From assembly GCA_965285935.1 (NCBI GenBank), contig OZ260661.1, forward strand, positions 123,132,001 through 123,196,000: 64,000 nucleotides of DNA. Direction: 5' to 3'. This DNA comes from Ophelia neglecta (lineage: Eukaryota). This document shows positions 46,903-54,000 of the stretch, piece after piece. The notes beneath the pieces were generated by a model. That model had not been told where the DNA came from. It searched no databases and was given only the letters and a program-made list of their open reading frames with translations. A program made the position numbers and the translations under genes. The stretch's first letter is position 1, and each line of letters opens with the position of its first letter.

Positions 46903-47305
46903 GGCAACAAAATTGACAGTGTTGAAACGCCTATATATATGTTCAACCTTGAAAACATAAAAATAAGTTCATTCAATGACACTGACCCGTAACAATGATT
47001 TGTGGGTAATAACGTTCAATGATAGAACAAAGAAAAGATATCGTAAAGAAGGAAGAGATGACAGGAGACTACAATAAATAAGTAGAAGCAGATTACTTAG
47101 GTAAAATTTATCATTTTACTACCATGTTTATTAGACAAGCAAGCTTGGGATTTAGGTATGTTTATTGCAGTCTTAGAACTAGTACTGATCATGTTATTTT
47201 TAATTAAGCCTGTTACTCACGATTTAGTGTAGACTTTGTTCACAAACATCGGCTATTTACGGTGGAATCTAATTTGATATCCAAAAAGAAAAAACCTAGC
47301 GTTTC
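46903..47305 (+). repeat. Local diverged direct duplicate of 44583-44940
   Basis: Both begin ggcaacaaaattga and end near aaaaa.acc.agcgtttc; a single copy is present in duplication copy B (~58420-58825). Confidence 0.8.
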
Positions 47306-48480
47306 AATTGTTTTCATGTTGACCTTTATAACTGTAATTAGAGACATGTTTAAAGTATAGTTTTACCTGGTATTACCATCCATACCTCGATTTACTTGAT
47401 ACAGCCGTTTATAAATATTAAAGTAGAAGCATCTTAGAACACGGTCAAATATGTGTTTGCTATTTCGCTTGTACATCTTGTACATAGCCATTAGAGTAAT
47501 AGTATCATATATAGGTGATTTTCCTGCAGCGACTTTCATACAAATTGATTTTACATATCAGGCTGCATGATCTGACCCAGCGCCGACATCCCTGTATTAA
47601 TACTAATAATAATTATAAGTAGTGGTACAGAGATGTTGGCACTGCAAGTTAGTTTATATAACACGTGATAAGCCGGCTTGTTTACTGTCTGATTGATGAA
47701 GCTCTGTGCAGATTTGTGCCCGAGCGTCACCGTGAGCAGTGAGCACGTGTTAGCCTTGCATGAAGAAATAAAAAGGACAAAATTATGGTTTAGATAGCAA
47801 ATGACTACGTTATACATGACTACAGACCGACTGGTATGGTCCATTGTAACTGATGTGAAAAATACCGAATCCTATATTTGTGTCTATGGAGTTATTATGG
47901 TAAACAAACGCCAATATGTAAATTTATTGTCAGGTTTGGGTTAGCATATATATAGTTAACTTTTATTCTGAAGCCCAGACGAAGGGCGTACGTACTAGTA
48001 TGTGTTATCTCCTAGTATGTGTGTTATTTACTGGCGTGTGTATATTTTCCTAAATAAAAAATAACCAATTTTATCAGCCAGTGACATTTTTTTGCATTTC
48101 CACATGAGGAAAATCACCTCGAAAAATTGTATCGTGCAGAACAGGAAAATAAAAATGCTTATGTTTAGAAAGCTTAGAAAAAAAACTTTCCCTATTGAGT
48201 GCTGTTTGTTTTACTGGTTTGCCTGCTATGTTCAGGGCATGTGACGCGCCACTGAAAAAAAAACCACTTATAAAACCTTTGAAGTTGAAAAATAAAAAAT
48301 ATATGGACCGTTCTTGAGTGTTAATCATAGGAATGTTCTAAAACTTAATATAGTTTAACCTAACCCCCCCCCCCCCCGCCAAATGTACGTAAATTGTGTT
48401 TAAACATCAACGTGTCACATTTCCAACTATAATTCATTTAAAAAGTAGATACCAGAACACTTAACGTCCAGTAGGCTGTG

Positions 48481-48488
48481 TATAAATA
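48481..48488 (+). promoter_or_regulatory. TATA box of the peptide/EF-hand gene
   Basis: TATAAATA about 30 bp upstream of an Inr-like TCATT (48513) and 58 bp upstream of the ATG. Confidence 0.65.
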
Positions 48489-48538
48489 CCGGAGCTTGAC
48501 ATCCAATTCGGTCATTAGAGCCATCTCTGCCGAACAAG

Positions 48539-49242
48539 ATGATACGGTTTCATTTGATGTTGGCCTTTATTTTGGCTTTTGTCGCTGTGGAGGTGGTCGC
48601 CTGGTTCGGCCCGATAACGACTACCATCAGAATCGGGCTAGGCGCCCGAAAAGTTATCAAATGGGGCAGAAAACGACGTAGAGACTCAGCATTGCCTATC
48701 CCATTTCACGGGGCAGATTACTTGTCAGGACATCTGGGCACGACCTTGAACATAATAGACGTGGATGAGAAGGTCAACGAGGAAGTGGTGGAAAGGCTGG
48801 TCAATGACATGTACCGCAGACAGCAGACGGGCGAAGACGAGGACGCCGCGGAAATGTCGCATATTTCCGGGGAGATTCTTTTCCTGTTGTGTAATGCAAA
48901 CGAGGACGAGCATATCGACTTCAATGAGTTCAAGAAATGTTTCCGAGGAACAAACGTCCCTGTGTCCCGACAGCAGTATCAGGTGTTTGATAAAGACGGT
49001 AAGAGTTGCAGATTTACGCATCATTTAATAGGCGCTATAAACAACTGTTTTCCGCGGAATTAGGCTATTTCCTGCTACTTACTGTTCAGTCATTTAAAAA
49101 CCGTAACCCTCTTATATTGACCATACAGAGAAAAACGCATACATTTATTTGAACATTTCTTTTTTTCACAGATGATGGTGTTTTAGGTCCTGAAGAGGTT
49201 GTCAATTATGATTTCCTGCTCAAGATACGTGGTACGGATTGA
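48539..49242 (+). CDS. Secreted precursor: signal peptide, cationic peptide, GRKRRR site, acidic spacer, two EF-hands (176 aa)
   Basis: Exons 48539-48998 (G/gtaaga) and 49172-49242 (ttcacag/), phase 1. Splicing completes the second EF loop DKDDDGVLGPEE; the first loop NANEDEHIDFNE is bracketed by two Cys. Confidence 0.88.
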
Positions 49243-49649
49243 CTAACTGATTTACTTTAATTCAAGCAGCATTTCGAGAGGTAGCATTTATGTTTTCTGG
49301 CACTCACGGCATATAAAATACCGTTCTAAATATAATTATTACAATGACCCGTAAATTCCACACCGAGGGGAAGGGGGGAGGTGTTAGTCGAAAGTTGGCG
49401 CCCCTTACCCCCAAGAATCTTCTCCTGAACAGCGGGGCGCGGAGCCTGGCGGGGGTAAATCACTAGCCCTATATATATAAACCTGCCCCTTACCCTATCC
49501 CTAACCCTAAACACCCAGCCCTAGCCTTAGCCTAGTCATATTTTGCTTTACGCCACTCACATATAATACCCATAACCTCCACCTCTGCCGAGCCTCCGCC
49601 TTTAATCAATAGCCGAATATATATGCGAGACACGTGCTTTTCTCTTGGC

Positions 49650-51024
49650 ATGCCCACTGTCGGGATCAGACATTGGAATTTAAGTCTGCCTATTATTTCA
49701 GCAGCGTCCTTAGGACAGATTTCTTTCGGTTAGTCCCCTAAACTGCATTTTCCCCTTTTTCACTAACTAAGTCGTTGGCGCAATTACTAACAGGCCCAGT
49801 AAGGCAGTTTATAAAGACGAATTCGAAAAGCACAGTTGTCGGGAAACCTCAAAGGGAGGGATAGTTATCTGAGTTAAGTAGTAAAGATATTGGGGCTGAA
49901 ATAATTCCCATAAATAGGCACTATAATTTTATTTTTGCAGGCAGCTATGATTGTTACAGCACCCTTGCGGTTGACTGTGCCAGTAGATTTGTCATGTACG
50001 TGAGGGCTAGAAACGCCACTGGCTCGTCTCTCTGTGGGGGAATTCAGGTGAGTAGTACGCATTTCATTTGATTTGCCGGGCGGGGTGGTGGTGGGAAGAG
50101 GGGGCGGGAAAGTGTGTGGGTGTTATACCCGTAGAGGCTTGCATTTGCACGAGAGATAACCTATTCTCGTCTCTTATCTTTGAATTATGCTATAGGCATT
50201 TGATGACTGCATCAAACAGAAGTACGACCTATGTGAAGATCCCCGGATGGACGACCTCGCAGAAGTACTAACTGGAGCGGAAAAAAGGCTGTCAACAATT
50301 TGCCCGGAAGGCGCGGAGACAGGTGGGTTGGCATGTTATATTCAACAAGCTGAACGATTAATTCAACTATTTGTCTCTCGTGAATAATTTCCCTGCATTT
50401 CTACTAAAATTGTACTTATTTTTGCACACGCCACTGCCTTCTCCGATTCATTGTCATGACTATGATCATGATATTGGTACGAGTAGTTTTTAGATATACA
50501 ATGGGCACATCCTCCCGGGGGGGATTCCTTATGGCGTATACATTTTTAAAAAATCTATGAGCGTGAAGGGTGAATGAGTCCACGGATTTATCTCCTAGAG
50601 CCTCTAAGGAATAGCTATCTCACACCCTCGAGATACTCGAGGAGCAAGTTACTGGTGTTTTAGGCGTCTCCGAACACCCATGGACTCCCCTTTCCCTGAA
50701 CCGGTAAGTGCTAAATAGAAACCTTTAATTAACATACTAGCTGATTTGTGTTTCTGTCTCTCAGAGGTGACATTACCGATGGACTGTATCGGCCTGGAGA
50801 CGGTCCATTGTGCCCGTAACTTGATGTTCGATCTCCACACGCCAATGGCTCCCTGCGTGGCAATGCACCGCTATGACCACTGTGTGCTGGAGAGGGTCCG
50901 CCGCTGTGAGGGAGAGGCCGGGGGAGACGCCATGCCCCTCTTCGGAGAATACTACCGCCGGAATGGGCCCGTTCGTTGCCCCGTACCAATTCCCATTAAA
51001 AGTGACCGCCGCGACCGCAACTAA
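49650..51024 (+). CDS. Putative secreted protein with two 6-Cys helical domains (190 aa)
   Basis: Exons 49650-49728, 49941-50047, 50196-50322, 50765-51024; GT-AG, phases 1/0/1, 573 nt open. Domain 1 C-x7-C-x18-C-x8-C-x7-C-x22-C; domain 2 C-x7-C-x14-C-x8-C-x7-C-x23-C. AATAAA near 51099. Exon 1 is the least certain. Confidence 0.78.
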
Positions 51025-54000
51025 TTATCAAACATAAGTGATAGGCTTTTATCGCGTTTTGACTTGACGCATGTAATAGTAGAAACTAATTCTCAGACAA
51101 TAAAAACTCCAGTCACGTAATGCATCGTTCCTGGAGAACGGATGAGTCAAACGACCAATGAATGTTATTGATATTAGTAAACTGCCGAGAAAATGTTATT
51201 CTTTATAAGTACTTTATTTAGTGATTTCTAATAGGACTATGCACATACGATTTCTTTTCTATATGATGAAATTATTGATACTTGGTGGGATATATTCAGC
51301 CTACTATATAATAACTGTAGCGAAATGAAAGTCCCTGTCTTTTCGGCCATGTTTTGTATATTCAAACTCTACCATTTAACGCGTGTCCAATGGATATTAC
51401 ACGTGGTATGTCTAAATTGTCCTCATAAGCTTCAAGATTTTTGTTTTCGAGTAGTATATTCTAATGAGTAATATATTCTGCTAGTAGTATAACCTGATAT
51501 GCTGTACGCTTTTTGTATTTAACAGTGATTTGATAATATTGATAACAATTCTATTATCCTGCTTTAGAAATTAAAGTTTATTAGGATAAACATTAATCCT
51601 GGTCGATTTTATATGCTTCCTGTCTCTTGATTTAATAAACGATTGATAAGTCACATCTGATGTTGGTTCTTTGACAGTGGAAATATGGAAATAGGCTCAA
51701 GATCTTAATATCGCCCGTTTATCATTCAATTAATTGAGCCAAATGAAAAGTAAGTGTGCAAGACTAAAATGAAGTATTTCATTTCATATTGTAAAATGAA
51801 ACTTATCCCCGAAAAGATGGCAAATCCCGCTTGTCCAATTTAAATCTATACGAAGACTGCCTACGTCTCGCTGTAGTCTATTCCTCCGCTGTTCCTCATT
51901 TATATTAATGAATATATCTATTTTTTTGACATTCTCATTTTAATAGTCTAGGGATGTTTCAAAGCCTCAAGGTTTGGGAAAGTTGTACCACCCACTTCTG
52001 GTAATCTTTTCCTGGCACTGTTCTACAGTCATTTGGCGTCCGAAAGGACATTGTTGTCGATATAGGCAAATTTGGCTAAGTTTTACATTGAGCGCTCTTC
52101 TCTAATATCAAGTATATATCCATAAAGTCTTAATGAGTTTTCGTGGCACATGTATGCAAAATCAAACAAACAAAAAACGGCTTTTGAAAGTAACAGTGGG
52201 TTAATAGTGGGAACTTGGTATTTGACATTACAGGGAATCCTGAAAATTTGTAAGCAAGTCTTTATATAAGTTTATCAATATCACTTTTTCTTTATTTACA
52301 AAAGTAAAAGGTCAATGCGGATTTCTAATGGAGGAATTCCACAATAAAACAGAATCAAACTTCTCAATAAAATCATCAATATCAGCTGTTTCAAAACATT
52401 TGTACAGCGCCAATCTAGAGACAAAAAAGTAAGTTACCATGAAAAGAAAATGAACATAAAATACCTAAATGCAAGCAAATATCAATTCACTGAAGGATCT
52501 TAGAAATAATCACAGTTAGATCTCTAGAATATCAATTGTCCTCGTTTTGCTGACTGCAATTGTTGGTACATACGTCATCGGTGGATTTAGGGTTGTCATA
52601 TTTTATCTCTTGCATAGAGAATTCAGTTATCACAGCTAAGAGTCTGCTTGGCTCGTCGCTCTGAGTTCCTACGTCATCTCCGACCCCCTTCCCTCAATGT
52701 GATTCGTCTCTACCTCACCTTCCGGTCTCTCGCTTTTTTCAACATTCGAGTTTCTTCCATAGCAAAAGATGTTATAAATGTCAGTATAATTTCGCTCATT
52801 CCATGTGTTTAAACATTTTAGTATGATCGAGATGAGTAATTTATTATTGTTTTCAACTATTTGTAATCGTTTTAATCGTTACTTCAATATATCAAGATGT
52901 GCTATAATGCTTAAAGTAGAATCTTAGTGTATTTTTTATATAGTTCTTAAGAGTTAAAGATGACAGGGGTAAAGTGTATTTTAGCATGGTAAATATAGGA
53001 AACTATGGGCAACGTTTATGATATCTTTATACTTTTTTTAGCATGTTTACTTTATCAATAAACTATTGGTTGAACTAGATAAATTATTGTAGTTATCATT
53101 TACGCTTATTACGGAGGGATTCATATATTGTATATTTAAAATGTTATAAGTAAATTGGAAAGTGTACCATAACGTCTGATTTCGCTCAGCTCAAAAAAAA
53201 AGAACGAAAATAGATAGGGGATAATTCCACTTTACAACTATGAAGGAAGTTGGGGCCGGATTTATTTGATAATATACGGTCCTTGGGGATCAAATAGGGC
53301 TTTTATTTATTCCTAAATACTTATAAAGTTTTCATTATCAAAATTTGTATATGGAGGTCTGATTTCACTCGCAAAATTGGTGTATCGCTCGCCGAGCGTA
53401 TTAGGAATTTCTTTGAGCGGAGATACAATTTTTGTGGCGAAATCGGGCTTTTGGACATTTTTCATGGTCTTTTATAACTTTCAAACATGAATAGGTGGTG
53501 GGGTACGAATGGATTCTAGTTACAATAAAGTTTGAACAGTACATTTAAACACTTTTCCCGGATTCCTAAGATGGAAACAACTAGTCGAAAAACAATGCCG
53601 GGCAAATCTTGTAGAACCTGAGCGGAATTACCCACTTTTACCCTATAGCATGCATTCATTATAGTCTGTGCCTCCATTTCATTTCAAATGATAAGGGATG
53701 CGTTCCTCAAACAGTTCACCAAATGACTTGCCTTGAGCCTGGGACAATCCCTTATTGGTAACCAAGTCCCCAATGGAGGAAGCATAGATTGATTCCATGA
53801 TGGGTAATTTTATTGTTAAAATGGGTTTAAAGTAGTACACATTGTTATTTCAATGTACCAGCTTAATAGTGGAGCGTAGTATCGGCCTTTTCGTTAGTCG
53901 TGTTTCAAGCAGCGTCGCTTCCATTTTTTGGAAAATGGCCGTAACTGTATAGCCATACGCTACGGTTCATAAAGAATACTTTGGCAGTTGCCTACACCAA

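What the first reader, a model, noticed from the sequence alone, without database searches (positions are those of the whole stretch)
48539..49242. Candidate host-defence or signalling precursor: amidated cationic 21-mer fused to a secreted EF-hand module
Seen: signal peptide (MIRFHLMLAFILAFVAVEVVA), then WFGPITTTIRIGLGARKVIKW (four basic and no acidic residues, Trp at both ends), then G-RKRRR, an acidic spacer and two EF-hands. The first EF-hand, C-NANEDEHIDFNEFKK-C, has C-x15-C spacing. Established: Gly followed by a basic cluster is the convertase/PAM amidation signal; signal-cationic peptide-anionic propiece is the layout of linear antimicrobial peptide precursors such as piscidins, clavanins and myticalins; C-x15-C is the disulfide-closed EF-hand of SPARC. 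Inference: one precursor releases an amidated membrane-active peptide plus an acidic Ca2+-binding domain that could neutralise the peptide and release it in a calcium-dependent way. I do not recognise this as a characterised family.
Basis: partly seen in the sequence, partly recalled or inferred. Interest (0 to 1): 0.82.

Follow-up and report, generated by a model that had tools for sequence, protein, structure and literature searches.

The report
Secreted EF-hand pro-protein, gene truncated by reader
The stretch is the first two exons of a five-exon worm gene for a secreted calcium-binding protein, a member of a little-known animal family, with a short fast-changing N-terminal piece that is probably cut off; nothing yet shows that this piece is an antimicrobial or signalling peptide.

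Summary
These are the signal peptide, the 21-residue cationic segment, G-RKRRR, the acidic spacer, the C-x15-C EF-hand and a second canonical EF-hand split by an intron.

The stop at 49240-49242 is very probably intronic. A GT donor at 49232 joins in phase to three further exons (49941-50047, 50196-50322, 50765-51024). The result is a 337-aa protein with two six-Cys, three-helix domains that are remotely RGM_N-like.

Support for the five-exon model:
- The 90%-identical tandem paralog keeps all five exons and every splice site.
- An annotated Owenia gene shares the last three intron positions and phases.
- The first plus-strand AATAAA after the promoter lies 75 nt after the distal stop.

The gene belongs to an uncharacterised bilaterian family: at least 16 genes in this genome, plus Owenia, Ptychodera and Saccoglossus. 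The family layout is signal peptide, variable short segment, basic site, EF-hand pair, then two six-Cys domains.

The scan met this family before on other DNA of this genome (s1-739848) and met the paralog (s1-746300).

The 21-mer evolves fast between the paralogs. It is not more amphipathic than shuffles and is predicted disordered. No RNA or peptide data exist.

Best reading: a convertase-processed pro-protein whose conserved core is the functional product. Peptide bioactivity remains possible but unproven.

The parts
48481..48488 (+). TATA box (TATAAATA), about 50 nt upstream of the ATG
   Evidence: Read. Conserved in the paralog.
48539..48998 (+). Coding exon 1: residues 1-153 plus the first base of codon 154
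   Evidence: GT donor at 48999. The paralog is 94% identical with the frame kept.
48539..48601 (+). Signal peptide, residues 1-21
   Evidence: Hydrophobic core with maximum KD 3.0. V at -3 and A at -1. Homologs have matching N-terminal signal-like segments. No SignalP run was available.
48602..48664 (+). 21-residue cationic, Trp-flanked segment (residues 22-42), the candidate released peptide or pro-segment
   Evidence: Net charge +4. 7.5 nonsynonymous against 0.5 synonymous changes versus the paralog. pLDDT below 50. Hydrophobic moment not above shuffles.
48665..48682 (+). G43 plus RKRRR (44-48): multibasic convertase-type site with a Gly amide donor
   Evidence: The paralog has G-RNRRR. Convertase P-domain loci and Cu-monooxygenase C-domain (Cu2_monoox_C) loci are present in the genome.
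48683..48814 (+). Acidic spacer, residues 49-92
   Evidence: Net charge about -7. Mostly low pLDDT, with one helix at 81-97.
48815..48820 (+). R93-R94, the dibasic pair that aligns with the family's conserved basic site
   Evidence: Alignments A2, A3 and A4.
48890..48940 (+). EF-hand 1 loop bracketed by Cys118 and Cys134 (C-x15-C)
   Evidence: The same bracket is present in C12 paralogs and Owenia. It is absent in the hemichordates.
48989..49199 (+). EF-hand 2 loop (residues 151-162), interrupted by intron 1 (48999-49171)
   Evidence: The same phase-1 intron position occurs in C12 and C5 paralogs.
49172..49231 (+). Coding exon 2 (60 nt, phase 1 in and out)
   Evidence: AG at 49170-49171 and GT at 49232-49233. 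96.7% identical in the paralog. A homologous 54-nt exon exists in the C12 gene.
49232..49940 (+).
   Evidence: The Owenia gene has an intron at the same place and phase.
49941..50047 (+). Coding exon 3: first half of six-Cys domain 1, including an N-glycosylation sequon (N198-A-T)
50196..50322 (+). Coding exon 4: second half of six-Cys domain 1
50765..51024 (+). Coding exon 5: six-Cys domain 2 and the TAA stop
   Evidence: The AF2 model is a three-helix bundle with pLDDT 73.8. Weak RGM_N match, E 0.11.
51099..51104 (+). AATAAA polyadenylation signal
   Evidence: First plus-strand AATAAA after 48296.

Best explanation
The finding covers the 5' part of a five-exon gene: 48539-48998, 49172-49231, 49941-50047, 50196-50322 and 50765-51024. 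The gene encodes a 337-residue secreted pro-protein.

Order of parts:
- signal peptide (1-21);
- a fast-evolving cationic 21-residue segment (22-42);
- G-RKRRR (43-48);
- an acidic spacer (49-92);
- a second dibasic pair (93-94) at the family's conserved site;
- an EF-hand pair, the first loop Cys-bracketed and degenerate, the second canonical;
- two six-Cys three-helix domains remotely related to the N-terminal domain of repulsive guidance molecules (RGM).

It is a lineage-specific, tandemly duplicated member of an uncharacterised bilaterian family.

Likely mechanism (inferred, not shown): the signal peptide is removed in the ER. A furin or prohormone-convertase-type enzyme then cuts after the multibasic site, and perhaps after R93-R94. 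Carboxypeptidase trimming and amidation of the exposed Gly could give a Trp-amide end.

The conserved, acidic, disulfide-rich EF-hand/RGM_N-like module is the main functional product, an extracellular Ca2+-dependent binding protein. The N-terminal segment is a pro-segment, and any independent activity of its own is unproven.
For: Gene model:
- All phases fit, and the exons sum to 1014 nt with no stop.
- The paralog keeps all five exons and all AG/GT sites, giving 338 aa.
- There are 15 residues between EF2 position 12 and the first Cys of domain 1, as in both Owenia proteins.
- The annotated Owenia gene L038 has introns of phases 1, 0, 1 at the same three places.
- No plus-strand AATAAA occurs between 48296 and 51099.

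Family:
- A profile of the exon-5 domain found Owenia and Ptychodera proteins among 1.84 billion.
- An alignment search added a third Owenia protein and a Saccoglossus protein.
- At least 16 genes on C1, C5 and C12 of this genome share the EF exon, the phase-1 intron and the six-Cys exons.

Domains:
- EF-hand Pfam models pass in all homologs.
- RGM_N passes its cut-off in Owenia P0003 (33.9 against 24.2 bits, two stretches).
- RGMA is the top, non-significant PDB sequence hit for the domain profile.
- The AF2 model is a three-helix bundle.

Secretion: signal-like N-termini occur throughout the family, the protein has 14 Cys (2+6+6) and one N-x-T sequon.

Selection: omega is about 0.17 for residues 83-337, against 7.5 nonsynonymous and 0.5 synonymous changes in the 21-mer.

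Processing enzymes: convertase P-domains and Cu2_monoox_C loci (the C-terminal domain shared by PHM and dopamine beta-hydroxylase, so not proof of an amidating enzyme) are present in the genome.
Against: - No RNA run holds the locus. The only public runs are DNA contigs that cross the introns unspliced, so the splicing, the expression and any short intron-retaining isoform are untested.
- Cleavage and amidation are inferred from motifs only.
- Several C12 paralogs have only a single basic residue after their N-terminal segment, so cleavage is not universal in the family.
- The RGM_N link for this gene itself is weak: E 0.11 and no hit in the genome-wide scan. The fold search does not discriminate it from generic helical bundles: Foldseek E above 4, VIA Z 4.6 against a top Z of 5.1.
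- The 3' half of the duplicated unit is 98-99.6% identical even in introns. Part of the apparent conservation therefore reflects gene conversion rather than selection.
Confidence: 0.6

Rival explanations
1. The precursor exists to deliver an amidated, membrane-active antimicrobial 21-mer, and the acidic Ca-binding part acts as a neutralising propiece.
For: - Cationic (+4), Trp-flanked and Gly-amidation-ready segment directly after the signal peptide and before an anionic region.
- Faster-than-neutral change between the paralogs.
- Tandem expansion with hypervariable N-terminal segments on a conserved scaffold, a pattern also seen in cathelicidins (my own knowledge).
- Linear amidated antimicrobial peptides exist in annelids, for example hedistin (PMC6780910).
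Against: - The hydrophobic moment is no higher than in 20-35% of shuffles at helix or strand periodicity.
- The segment has three Gly, one Pro and a Thr triplet, and is predicted disordered.
- An internal RK here and RR in the paralog could cut the 21-mer.
- The 'propiece' is a conserved 240-290-residue multidomain protein found across phyla, and hemichordate N-terminal segments are acidic.
- The annelid antimicrobial peptide review never mentions an EF-hand.
- No expression or activity data exist.
Confidence: 0.12
2. A neuropeptide, hormone or pheromone-type precursor. The N-terminal segment, or a short C-terminal Trp-amide fragment released at the internal dibasic pair, is a signalling peptide. 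This would resemble nesfatin-1 being cut from the secreted EF-hand protein nucleobindin-2.
For: - G plus a multibasic site is the classical amidation signal.
- An internal RK/RR would give a four-residue Trp-amide.
- The genome has convertases and many Cu2_monoox_C loci, a domain that the amidating PHM shares with dopamine beta-hydroxylase, so PHM itself is not shown.
Against: - The peptide sequence is not conserved even between 90%-identical paralogs, nor across the family, which is unlike receptor-constrained neuropeptides.
- Only one copy per precursor.
- No match to known peptide families was seen: Pfam found nothing on that part.
- No expression data exist.
Confidence: 0.1
3. The N-terminal segment is a membrane-association module: a hydrophobic-cationic stretch here, and Cys-rich, possibly lipidated stretches in the paralogs. 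It would hold the EF-hand/six-Cys module at the cell surface, and the basic site would act as a shedding switch.
For: - C12 paralogs carry very hydrophobic poly-Cys stretches right after the signal-like region.
- Most other members start with a single unpaired Cys after the predicted signal cleavage site; Owenia P0005 has 15 Cys.
- Here the segment is Trp-flanked and interfacial in character.
Against: - No lipidation motif could be tested.
- This gene has no Cys in the segment.
- The segment contains Arg, Thr and Gly and is too polar for a transmembrane helix; the maximum 19-residue hydropathy lies in residues 4-26.
- This is pure inference.
Confidence: 0.12
4. Two separate genes, or a short isoform. 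The EF-hand protein would really end at TGA 49242, and the six-Cys exons would form an independent gene with its own start near 49650 (note s1-751494).
For: - An ATG-initiated open segment at 49650-49728 ends at a possible GT donor in phase 1.
- No RNA evidence is available to exclude it.
Against: - That segment is a poor signal peptide.
- In every other family member and in three other species the EF-hand pair and the six-Cys domains are one protein.
- Spacing and intron phases match Owenia.
- There is no AATAAA after 49242 until 51099.
Confidence: 0.05

Closest known systems
Uncharacterised EF-hand proteins of Owenia fusiformis (CAH1802646.1, CAH1786138.1 and a third), Ptychodera flava XP_070575160.1 and Saccoglossus LOC100369605
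   Same: - Signal peptide, short variable segment, basic site, EF-hand pair and two six-Cys helical domains.
- The Owenia proteins share the Cys-bracketed first EF-hand and the positions and phases of the last three introns.
   Different: - This gene has an extra N-terminal unit not seen in those proteins: the cationic 21-mer, G-RKRRR and a 44-residue acidic spacer, all placed before the family's basic site.
- It lacks the N-terminal Cys.
- Its first EF loop is degenerate.
- It has an extra intron inside EF loop 2.
Repulsive guidance molecules (RGMA/B/C), N-terminal domain (Pfam RGM_N)
   Same: - A small disulfide-rich three-helix domain with the C-x8-C-x7-C core spacing.
- Owenia homolog P0003 passes the Pfam cut-off.
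- RGMA and hemojuvelin are the top weak PDB sequence hits.
   Different: - No RGM C-terminal (von Willebrand-type, autocleaving) part and no GPI signal region.
- The domain is duplicated and fused to EF-hands.
- For this gene the match is below significance, and the fold search is not discriminating.
SPARC/osteonectin extracellular Ca-binding (EC) domain
   Same: Secreted and acidic, with an EF-hand pair in which one loop is closed by a Cys pair 15 residues apart. The SPARC Cys256-Cys272 bracket is from my own knowledge.
   Different: - The bracketed hand is the first here and the second in SPARC.
- Pfam SPARC_Ca_bdg stays below its cut-off and aligns to the unbracketed hand.
- There is no follistatin-like or Kazal domain.
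- The hemichordate homologs lack the bracket.
Nucleobindin-2 / nesfatin-1
   Same: A secreted EF-hand protein from which convertases release an N-terminal peptide at dibasic sites (my own knowledge). This is the nearest functional analogy.
   Different: No sequence relationship was detected, the peptide is 82 residues and conserved, and there are no six-Cys domains.
Linear cationic antimicrobial peptide precursors (piscidins, clavanins, myticalins; hedistin in annelids)
   Same: The order signal peptide, cationic peptide, Gly/basic site, anionic C-terminal part. Hedistin is amidated (PMC6780910).
   Different: - The C-terminal part here is a large, conserved, folded protein.
- The peptide is not amphipathic beyond chance.
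- No activity data exist.

Membership tests
Uncharacterised bilaterian family (signal peptide, variable segment, basic site, EF-hand pair, two six-Cys domains) | EF-hand pair followed by two six-Cys helical domains in one polypeptide | tested here: met
   The five-exon model is in frame, the paralog is intact, and the spacing and intron phases match Owenia. The exon-5 profile retrieves the Owenia and Ptychodera proteins. The joined protein itself was not sent to any search tool.
Uncharacterised bilaterian family (signal peptide, variable segment, basic site, EF-hand pair, two six-Cys domains) | N-terminal signal peptide, then a short non-conserved segment ending at a di- or multibasic site upstream of EF-hand 1 | tested here: met
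   RKRRR at 44-48 and RR at 93-94; the latter aligns with KR, RRRR and RQRR of the homologs. C5 paralogs have FKR, RGR and RK at the exon 1/2 border.
EF-hand (Pfam EF-hand_1/6/7) | Helix-loop-helix with a 12-residue Ca-binding loop: D/N at positions 1, 3 and 5, G at 6, hydrophobic at 8, E at 12 | tested here: inconclusive
   Loop 2 (151-162) fits fully. Loop 1 has N at position 1 and E at position 6, and Pfam scores only E 0.11 on exon 1. The homologs pass the cut-offs, and the family profile hits calmodulin and troponin C at about 1e-9 to 1e-12. Ca binding itself is not testable here.
RGM family | RGM_N domain (Pfam PF06535) above the gathering score | tested here: not met
   Exon 5 scores 13.1 bits against a cut-off of 24.2, and the family loci do not appear in the genome-wide scan. 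The cut-off is met only by Owenia homolog P0003 (33.9 bits), so the relation is remote and transitive.
RGM family | C-terminal RGM part with an autocleaving von Willebrand-type domain and a GPI anchor | tested here: not met
   The protein ends 14 residues after the last Cys of domain 2. No RGM_C hit was found in any homolog.
SPARC family (EC domain) | Pfam SPARC_Ca_bdg above its cut-off, with a follistatin-like/Kazal module | tested here: not met
   No hit on exon 1. Owenia homologs score 19.6 and 14.4 bits against a cut-off of 22, on the unbracketed hand. There is no follistatin or Kazal domain.
Linear amphipathic cationic antimicrobial peptide precursors | Mature peptide with a strong amphipathic periodicity | tested here: not met
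   The hydrophobic moment is 0.29 at 100 degrees and 0.34 at 170 degrees. 31% and 20% of shuffles reach these values. Only an 11-residue C-terminal window is amphipathic (0.69).
Linear amphipathic cationic antimicrobial peptide precursors | Antimicrobial or membrane-lytic activity of the released peptide | not testable with these tools
   This needs a synthetic peptide and MIC or liposome assays.
Amidated secretory peptides | Gly directly before a basic convertase site, with processing enzymes present in the organism | tested here: met
   G43-RKRRR here and G-RNRRR in the paralog. Convertase P-domain loci are present in the genome. The 44 Cu2_monoox_C loci carry a domain also found in dopamine beta-hydroxylase-like enzymes, so an amidating enzyme is likely but not proven. 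Actual amidation is not testable here.

The most novel reading that the evidence does not exclude
The family could be a 'conserved carrier plus hypervariable peptide' system, analogous to cathelicidins but built on a Ca2+-binding EF-hand/RGM_N-like scaffold. Each tandem paralog would release a different bioactive N-terminal peptide, for defence or signalling. The chromosome-1 pair would have evolved an amidated cationic Trp-capped version, kept inactive by the acidic, Ca2+-sensitive carrier until cleavage.
Probability: 0.15. Interest if true: 0.8.

Novelty: new variant of a known kind. Interest (0 to 1): 0.45.

Why it matters
**Annotation.** The check corrects a gene model. Two first-stage findings in this window (this one and s1-751494) are one gene.

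**Biology.** The check places the gene in a bilaterian family of secreted proteins that no database names and no paper I could find describes. The family combines an EF-hand pair with two RGM_N-like domains. In RGMs that domain binds BMP ligands (my own knowledge), so the family may be unrecognised extracellular, calcium-dependent modulators.

**The N-terminal segments.** The family has expanded to at least 16 tandem genes here, with strikingly diverse N-terminal segments: cationic, poly-Cys and Ser/Arg repeats. If those segments are released and active, this would be a new peptide-delivery scaffold in invertebrate immunity or signalling. If they are only pro-segments, the interest lies in the conserved core.

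Tried and rejected
- **Word-based protein search with exon 1:** no hit. The length window of 84-268 aa excludes the roughly 300-340 aa relatives, so this blank means little.
- **ESM Atlas with Owenia P0005:** no usable hit.
- **RNA evidence:** no RNA run was found, and the three holders are DNA contigs of one sample with no joints. Expression and splicing could therefore not be checked.
- **Foldseek on the exon-5 model:** nothing at E below 4. In the VIA second look RGMC scored Z 4.6, tied with generic helical bundles, so the fold search neither supports nor refutes RGM_N.
- **RGM_N scan of the genome:** it picks up a presumed true RGM locus on C8 but none of the family loci.
- **Apparent open frame across the exon 2/3 junction in C12 paralogs:** this turned out to be read-through of a polypyrimidine/AG acceptor. 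A separate 54-nt exon 2 exists there.
- **Cytoplasmic model:** I considered an N-terminal transmembrane anchor with cytoplasmic EF-hands, following the positive-inside rule. I rejected it because of the 12 downstream disulfide-type cysteines, the N-x-T sequon and the classical signal peptides of the homologs.
- **Literature searches** (RGM plus EF-hand; Owenia neuropeptide precursors; annelid antimicrobial peptides): nothing on this family.
- **Complex prediction was not used.** The peptide is shorter than the 30-residue minimum, and I do not claim binding.
- **Handling of the joined model.** Those steps were done exon by exon by reference, and the joined search was left out.
Full report
**What is in the sequence**

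The window at 48539 opens with an ATG about 50 nt after a TATAAATA box. Translation gives these parts:
- a signal-peptide-like start (residues 1-21), with a 12-residue hydrophobic core and V and A at -3 and -1;
- a 21-residue segment with Trp at both ends, four basic and no acidic residues;
- Gly43 and RKRRR (44-48);
- an acidic stretch;
- an EF-hand loop bracketed by Cys118 and Cys134, exactly 15 residues apart;
- the first three residues of a second EF loop.

A GT-AG intron (48999-49171, phase 1) splits that second loop. Exon 2 completes a canonical loop at residues 151-162. Pfam recognises the first hand only weakly on this exon (EF-hand_1, E 0.11). That loop has N at position 1 and E at position 6.

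Two earlier notes of this scan raised the question. One describes a 'hidden' gene with two six-Cys domains 400 bp downstream (s1-751494). The other describes a six-exon gene elsewhere in this genome that joins a short peptide, an EF-hand pair and two six-Cys domains (s1-739848).

Reading on, the TGA at 49240-49242 lies 8 nt past a GT donor at 49232-49233. Splicing there, in phase 1, joins exon 2 to 49941-50047, then 50196-50322, then 50765-51024. All phases fit (1, 1, 0, 1). The sum is 1014 nt with a single terminal stop, giving 337 residues.

Four independent lines support this model:
- **Paralog.** The tandem paralog 17.8 kb downstream (this is note s1-746300) keeps all five exons, every AG and GT, and an open 338-codon frame.
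- **Spacing.** There are 15 residues between position 12 of EF loop 2 and the first Cys of the next domain. Both Owenia homologs have the same spacing.
- **Intron positions.** The annotated Owenia gene for P0003 (L038) has introns of phases 1, 0, 1 at the same three places as my exon 2/3, 3/4 and 4/5 junctions. The first is within one residue.
- **Polyadenylation.** There is no plus-strand AATAAA between 48296 and 51099, and the first one lies 75 nt after the distal TAA.

The alternative is a separate downstream gene starting at an ATG near 49650. It needs a poor signal peptide and has no parallel in any relative. RNA could not settle the matter. The only public runs holding the locus are DNA contigs of one sample, and they cross the introns unspliced.

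**Family**

*Genes in this genome.* Exon 1 alone found nothing in the word-indexed protein search. That tool only sees proteins of 84-268 aa for this query, so the blank is uninformative. Within the genome, exon 1 and exon 5 together find at least 16 related genes:

| Location | Genes |
|---|---|
| C1 | 2 |
| C12, 70.14-70.21 Mb | at least 6 |
| C5, 28.06-28.12 Mb | 6 |
| C5, 33.96-34.00 Mb | 2 |

All share the Cys-bracketed first EF-hand and the phase-1 intron after the third residue of loop 2. All also have the downstream six-Cys exons.

*Relatives in other species.* A profile of ten exon-5 domains (A1) was searched against 1.84 billion representatives. It gave six hits. The four that are family proteins of known or evident origin are:
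- two Owenia fusiformis proteins;
- one Ptychodera flava protein;
- an unnamed metagenomic fragment (P0001) close to the C5 genes.

A further alignment search added a third Owenia protein and a partial Saccoglossus protein. All are labelled 'unnamed' or 'uncharacterized'.

Each has a signal peptide, a short non-conserved segment, a basic site (KR, RRRR, RQRR), an EF-hand pair and two six-Cys domains. Other agents' notes call this genome an annelid. I did not verify that directly, but the closest external relatives are annelid.

**Domains**

- **EF-hands.** The homologs pass the Pfam EF-hand cut-offs. The family profile hits calmodulin, troponin C and calcineurin B at about 1e-9 to 1e-12.
- **Six-Cys domains.** Owenia P0003 passes the Pfam RGM_N cut-off (33.9 against 24.2 bits, E 3.6e-8, both domains). 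Exon 5 of this gene gives the same family as its only Pfam hit, but at E 0.11. Two of the ten paralog domains hit it (best E 0.007). RGMA and hemojuvelin lead the PDB sequence search at non-significant E values.
- **Structure.** The AF2 model of exon 5 is a three-helix bundle (pLDDT 73.8). Foldseek finds nothing significant, with RGMC at rank 2. The VIA second look gives RGMC Z 4.6, tied with generic bundles. I therefore call the domains RGM_N-like by remote, transitive sequence evidence, not by fold.
- **SPARC.** The resemblance is limited to the Cys spacing. The hemichordate homologs lack the bracket altogether.

**The N-terminal segment**

*Variation across the family.* The segment between the signal peptide and the EF-hands varies greatly:
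- short Cys-initiated peptides ending in an aromatic residue before FKR, RGR or RK in the C5 genes;
- poly-Cys hydrophobic stretches or Ser/Arg repeats in the C12 genes;
- a Gly/Arg-rich 36-mer or a three-Cys 18-mer in Owenia;
- long acidic stretches in the hemichordates.

*Which site is the family's site.* In alignments the family's basic site lines up with R93-R94 of this gene, not with RKRRR. The 21-mer, G-RKRRR and the 44-residue acidic spacer are therefore an extra unit specific to the chromosome-1 pair. The Gly amide donor is not a family feature.

*Rate of change.* Between the two paralogs the 21-mer carries 7.5 nonsynonymous and 0.5 synonymous differences. Residues 83-337 give omega of about 0.17. 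The counts are small. Identity of the whole duplicated unit also rises from 91% upstream to 99.6% in exon 5, introns included. That points to a conversion tract as well as to selection.

*Physical properties.* The peptide's hydrophobic moment is matched by 20-35% of shuffles at helix or strand periodicity. AF2 leaves residues 24-78 below pLDDT 50. An internal RK (RR in the paralog) could cut the peptide into a 15-mer and a four-residue Trp-amide.

*Processing enzymes.* The genome encodes convertase P-domains and many Cu2_monoox_C loci. That domain is shared by the amidating enzyme PHM and by dopamine beta-hydroxylase, so an amidating enzyme is likely but not proven.

**Interpretation**

The most economical reading is a secreted pro-protein. 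Shown by sequence and comparison:
- the five-exon gene;
- family membership;
- the EF-hand pair;
- the 14 cysteines arranged 2+6+6;
- the N-glycosylation sequon;
- purifying selection on the core;
- rapid change of the 21-mer.

Inferred only: signal-peptide cleavage after A21, convertase cleavage after RKRRR and perhaps R93-R94, amidation, Ca2+ binding, and an extracellular ligand-binding role for the RGM_N-like domains.

None can be tested without expression, peptidomic or biochemical data. A review of annelid antimicrobial peptides lists no family with an EF-hand precursor (PMC6780910). I found no paper on this protein family.

**Method note**

The joined 337-residue model was built only inside local scripts, for the frame check, dN/dS, composition and tblastn against loci already fetched. 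All database, family, structure and fold tools were given single exons by reference or public homologs.

**Verdict**

- **Observation:** partly confirmed. The features are real but the gene end is wrong.
- **Interpretation:** partly supported. The layout of peptide, processing site and conserved module is right. The roles of 'propiece' and 'product' are probably reversed, and bioactivity is unproven.
- **Earlier coverage:** the family was already met by this scan on another chromosome (s1-739848), and the paralog was noted separately (s1-746300).

Noticed in passing
L028-L037 (C5 28.06-28.12 and 33.96-34.00 Mb); proteins P0003, P0005, P0006, P0008: In most family members the first residue after the predicted signal cleavage site is a lone Cys, followed by basic residues. 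This gives an odd cysteine count (15 in Owenia P0005). It could form an intermolecular disulfide, tether the pro-segment, or be a site of N-terminal lipidation. The chromosome-1 pair has Trp instead.
   Followed up: partly
L022:4821-5168, L008:3750-4100, L026:1789-2157, L023:7444-7938 (C12 cluster, minus strand): C12 paralogs carry extreme N-terminal segments after the signal-like region: runs of 5-9 cysteines within 11-13 residues, or a 9-fold Ser/Arg repeat. Most have only a single basic residue before the linker.
   Followed up: no
window 47039-51524 versus L006:826-5822: Identity of the duplicated unit rises from about 91% (upstream, exon 1) to 98-99.6% (intron 4, exon 5, downstream), introns included. 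This suggests a gene-conversion tract covering the 3' end. Intron 3 is 148 nt here and 717 nt in the paralog.
   Followed up: partly
L003:900-1470 (minus strand), intron 1 of a C12 paralog: A long minisatellite of roughly 33-36-nt units fills the intron and is open in several frames. It could mislead ORF-based reading.
   Followed up: no
window 48363-48379: A poly-C tract upstream of the promoter shows a 6-C length difference in one read-derived contig.
   Followed up: no
G000 C9 5.8-8.8 Mb, C7 9.4-11.0 and 33.3 Mb, C2 82.9-97.4 Mb; also C1:123547797 and C1:123562814: There are 44 six-frame matches to the Cu2_monoox_C domain (PHM/dopamine-beta-hydroxylase type), many in tandem clusters. This is an unusually large expansion of copper monooxygenase-like genes. 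Two lie about 350 kb downstream of this window.
   Followed up: no
window 49480-49515 (intron 2): A short run of CCCTAA-like telomere-type repeats lies inside the intron.
   Followed up: no
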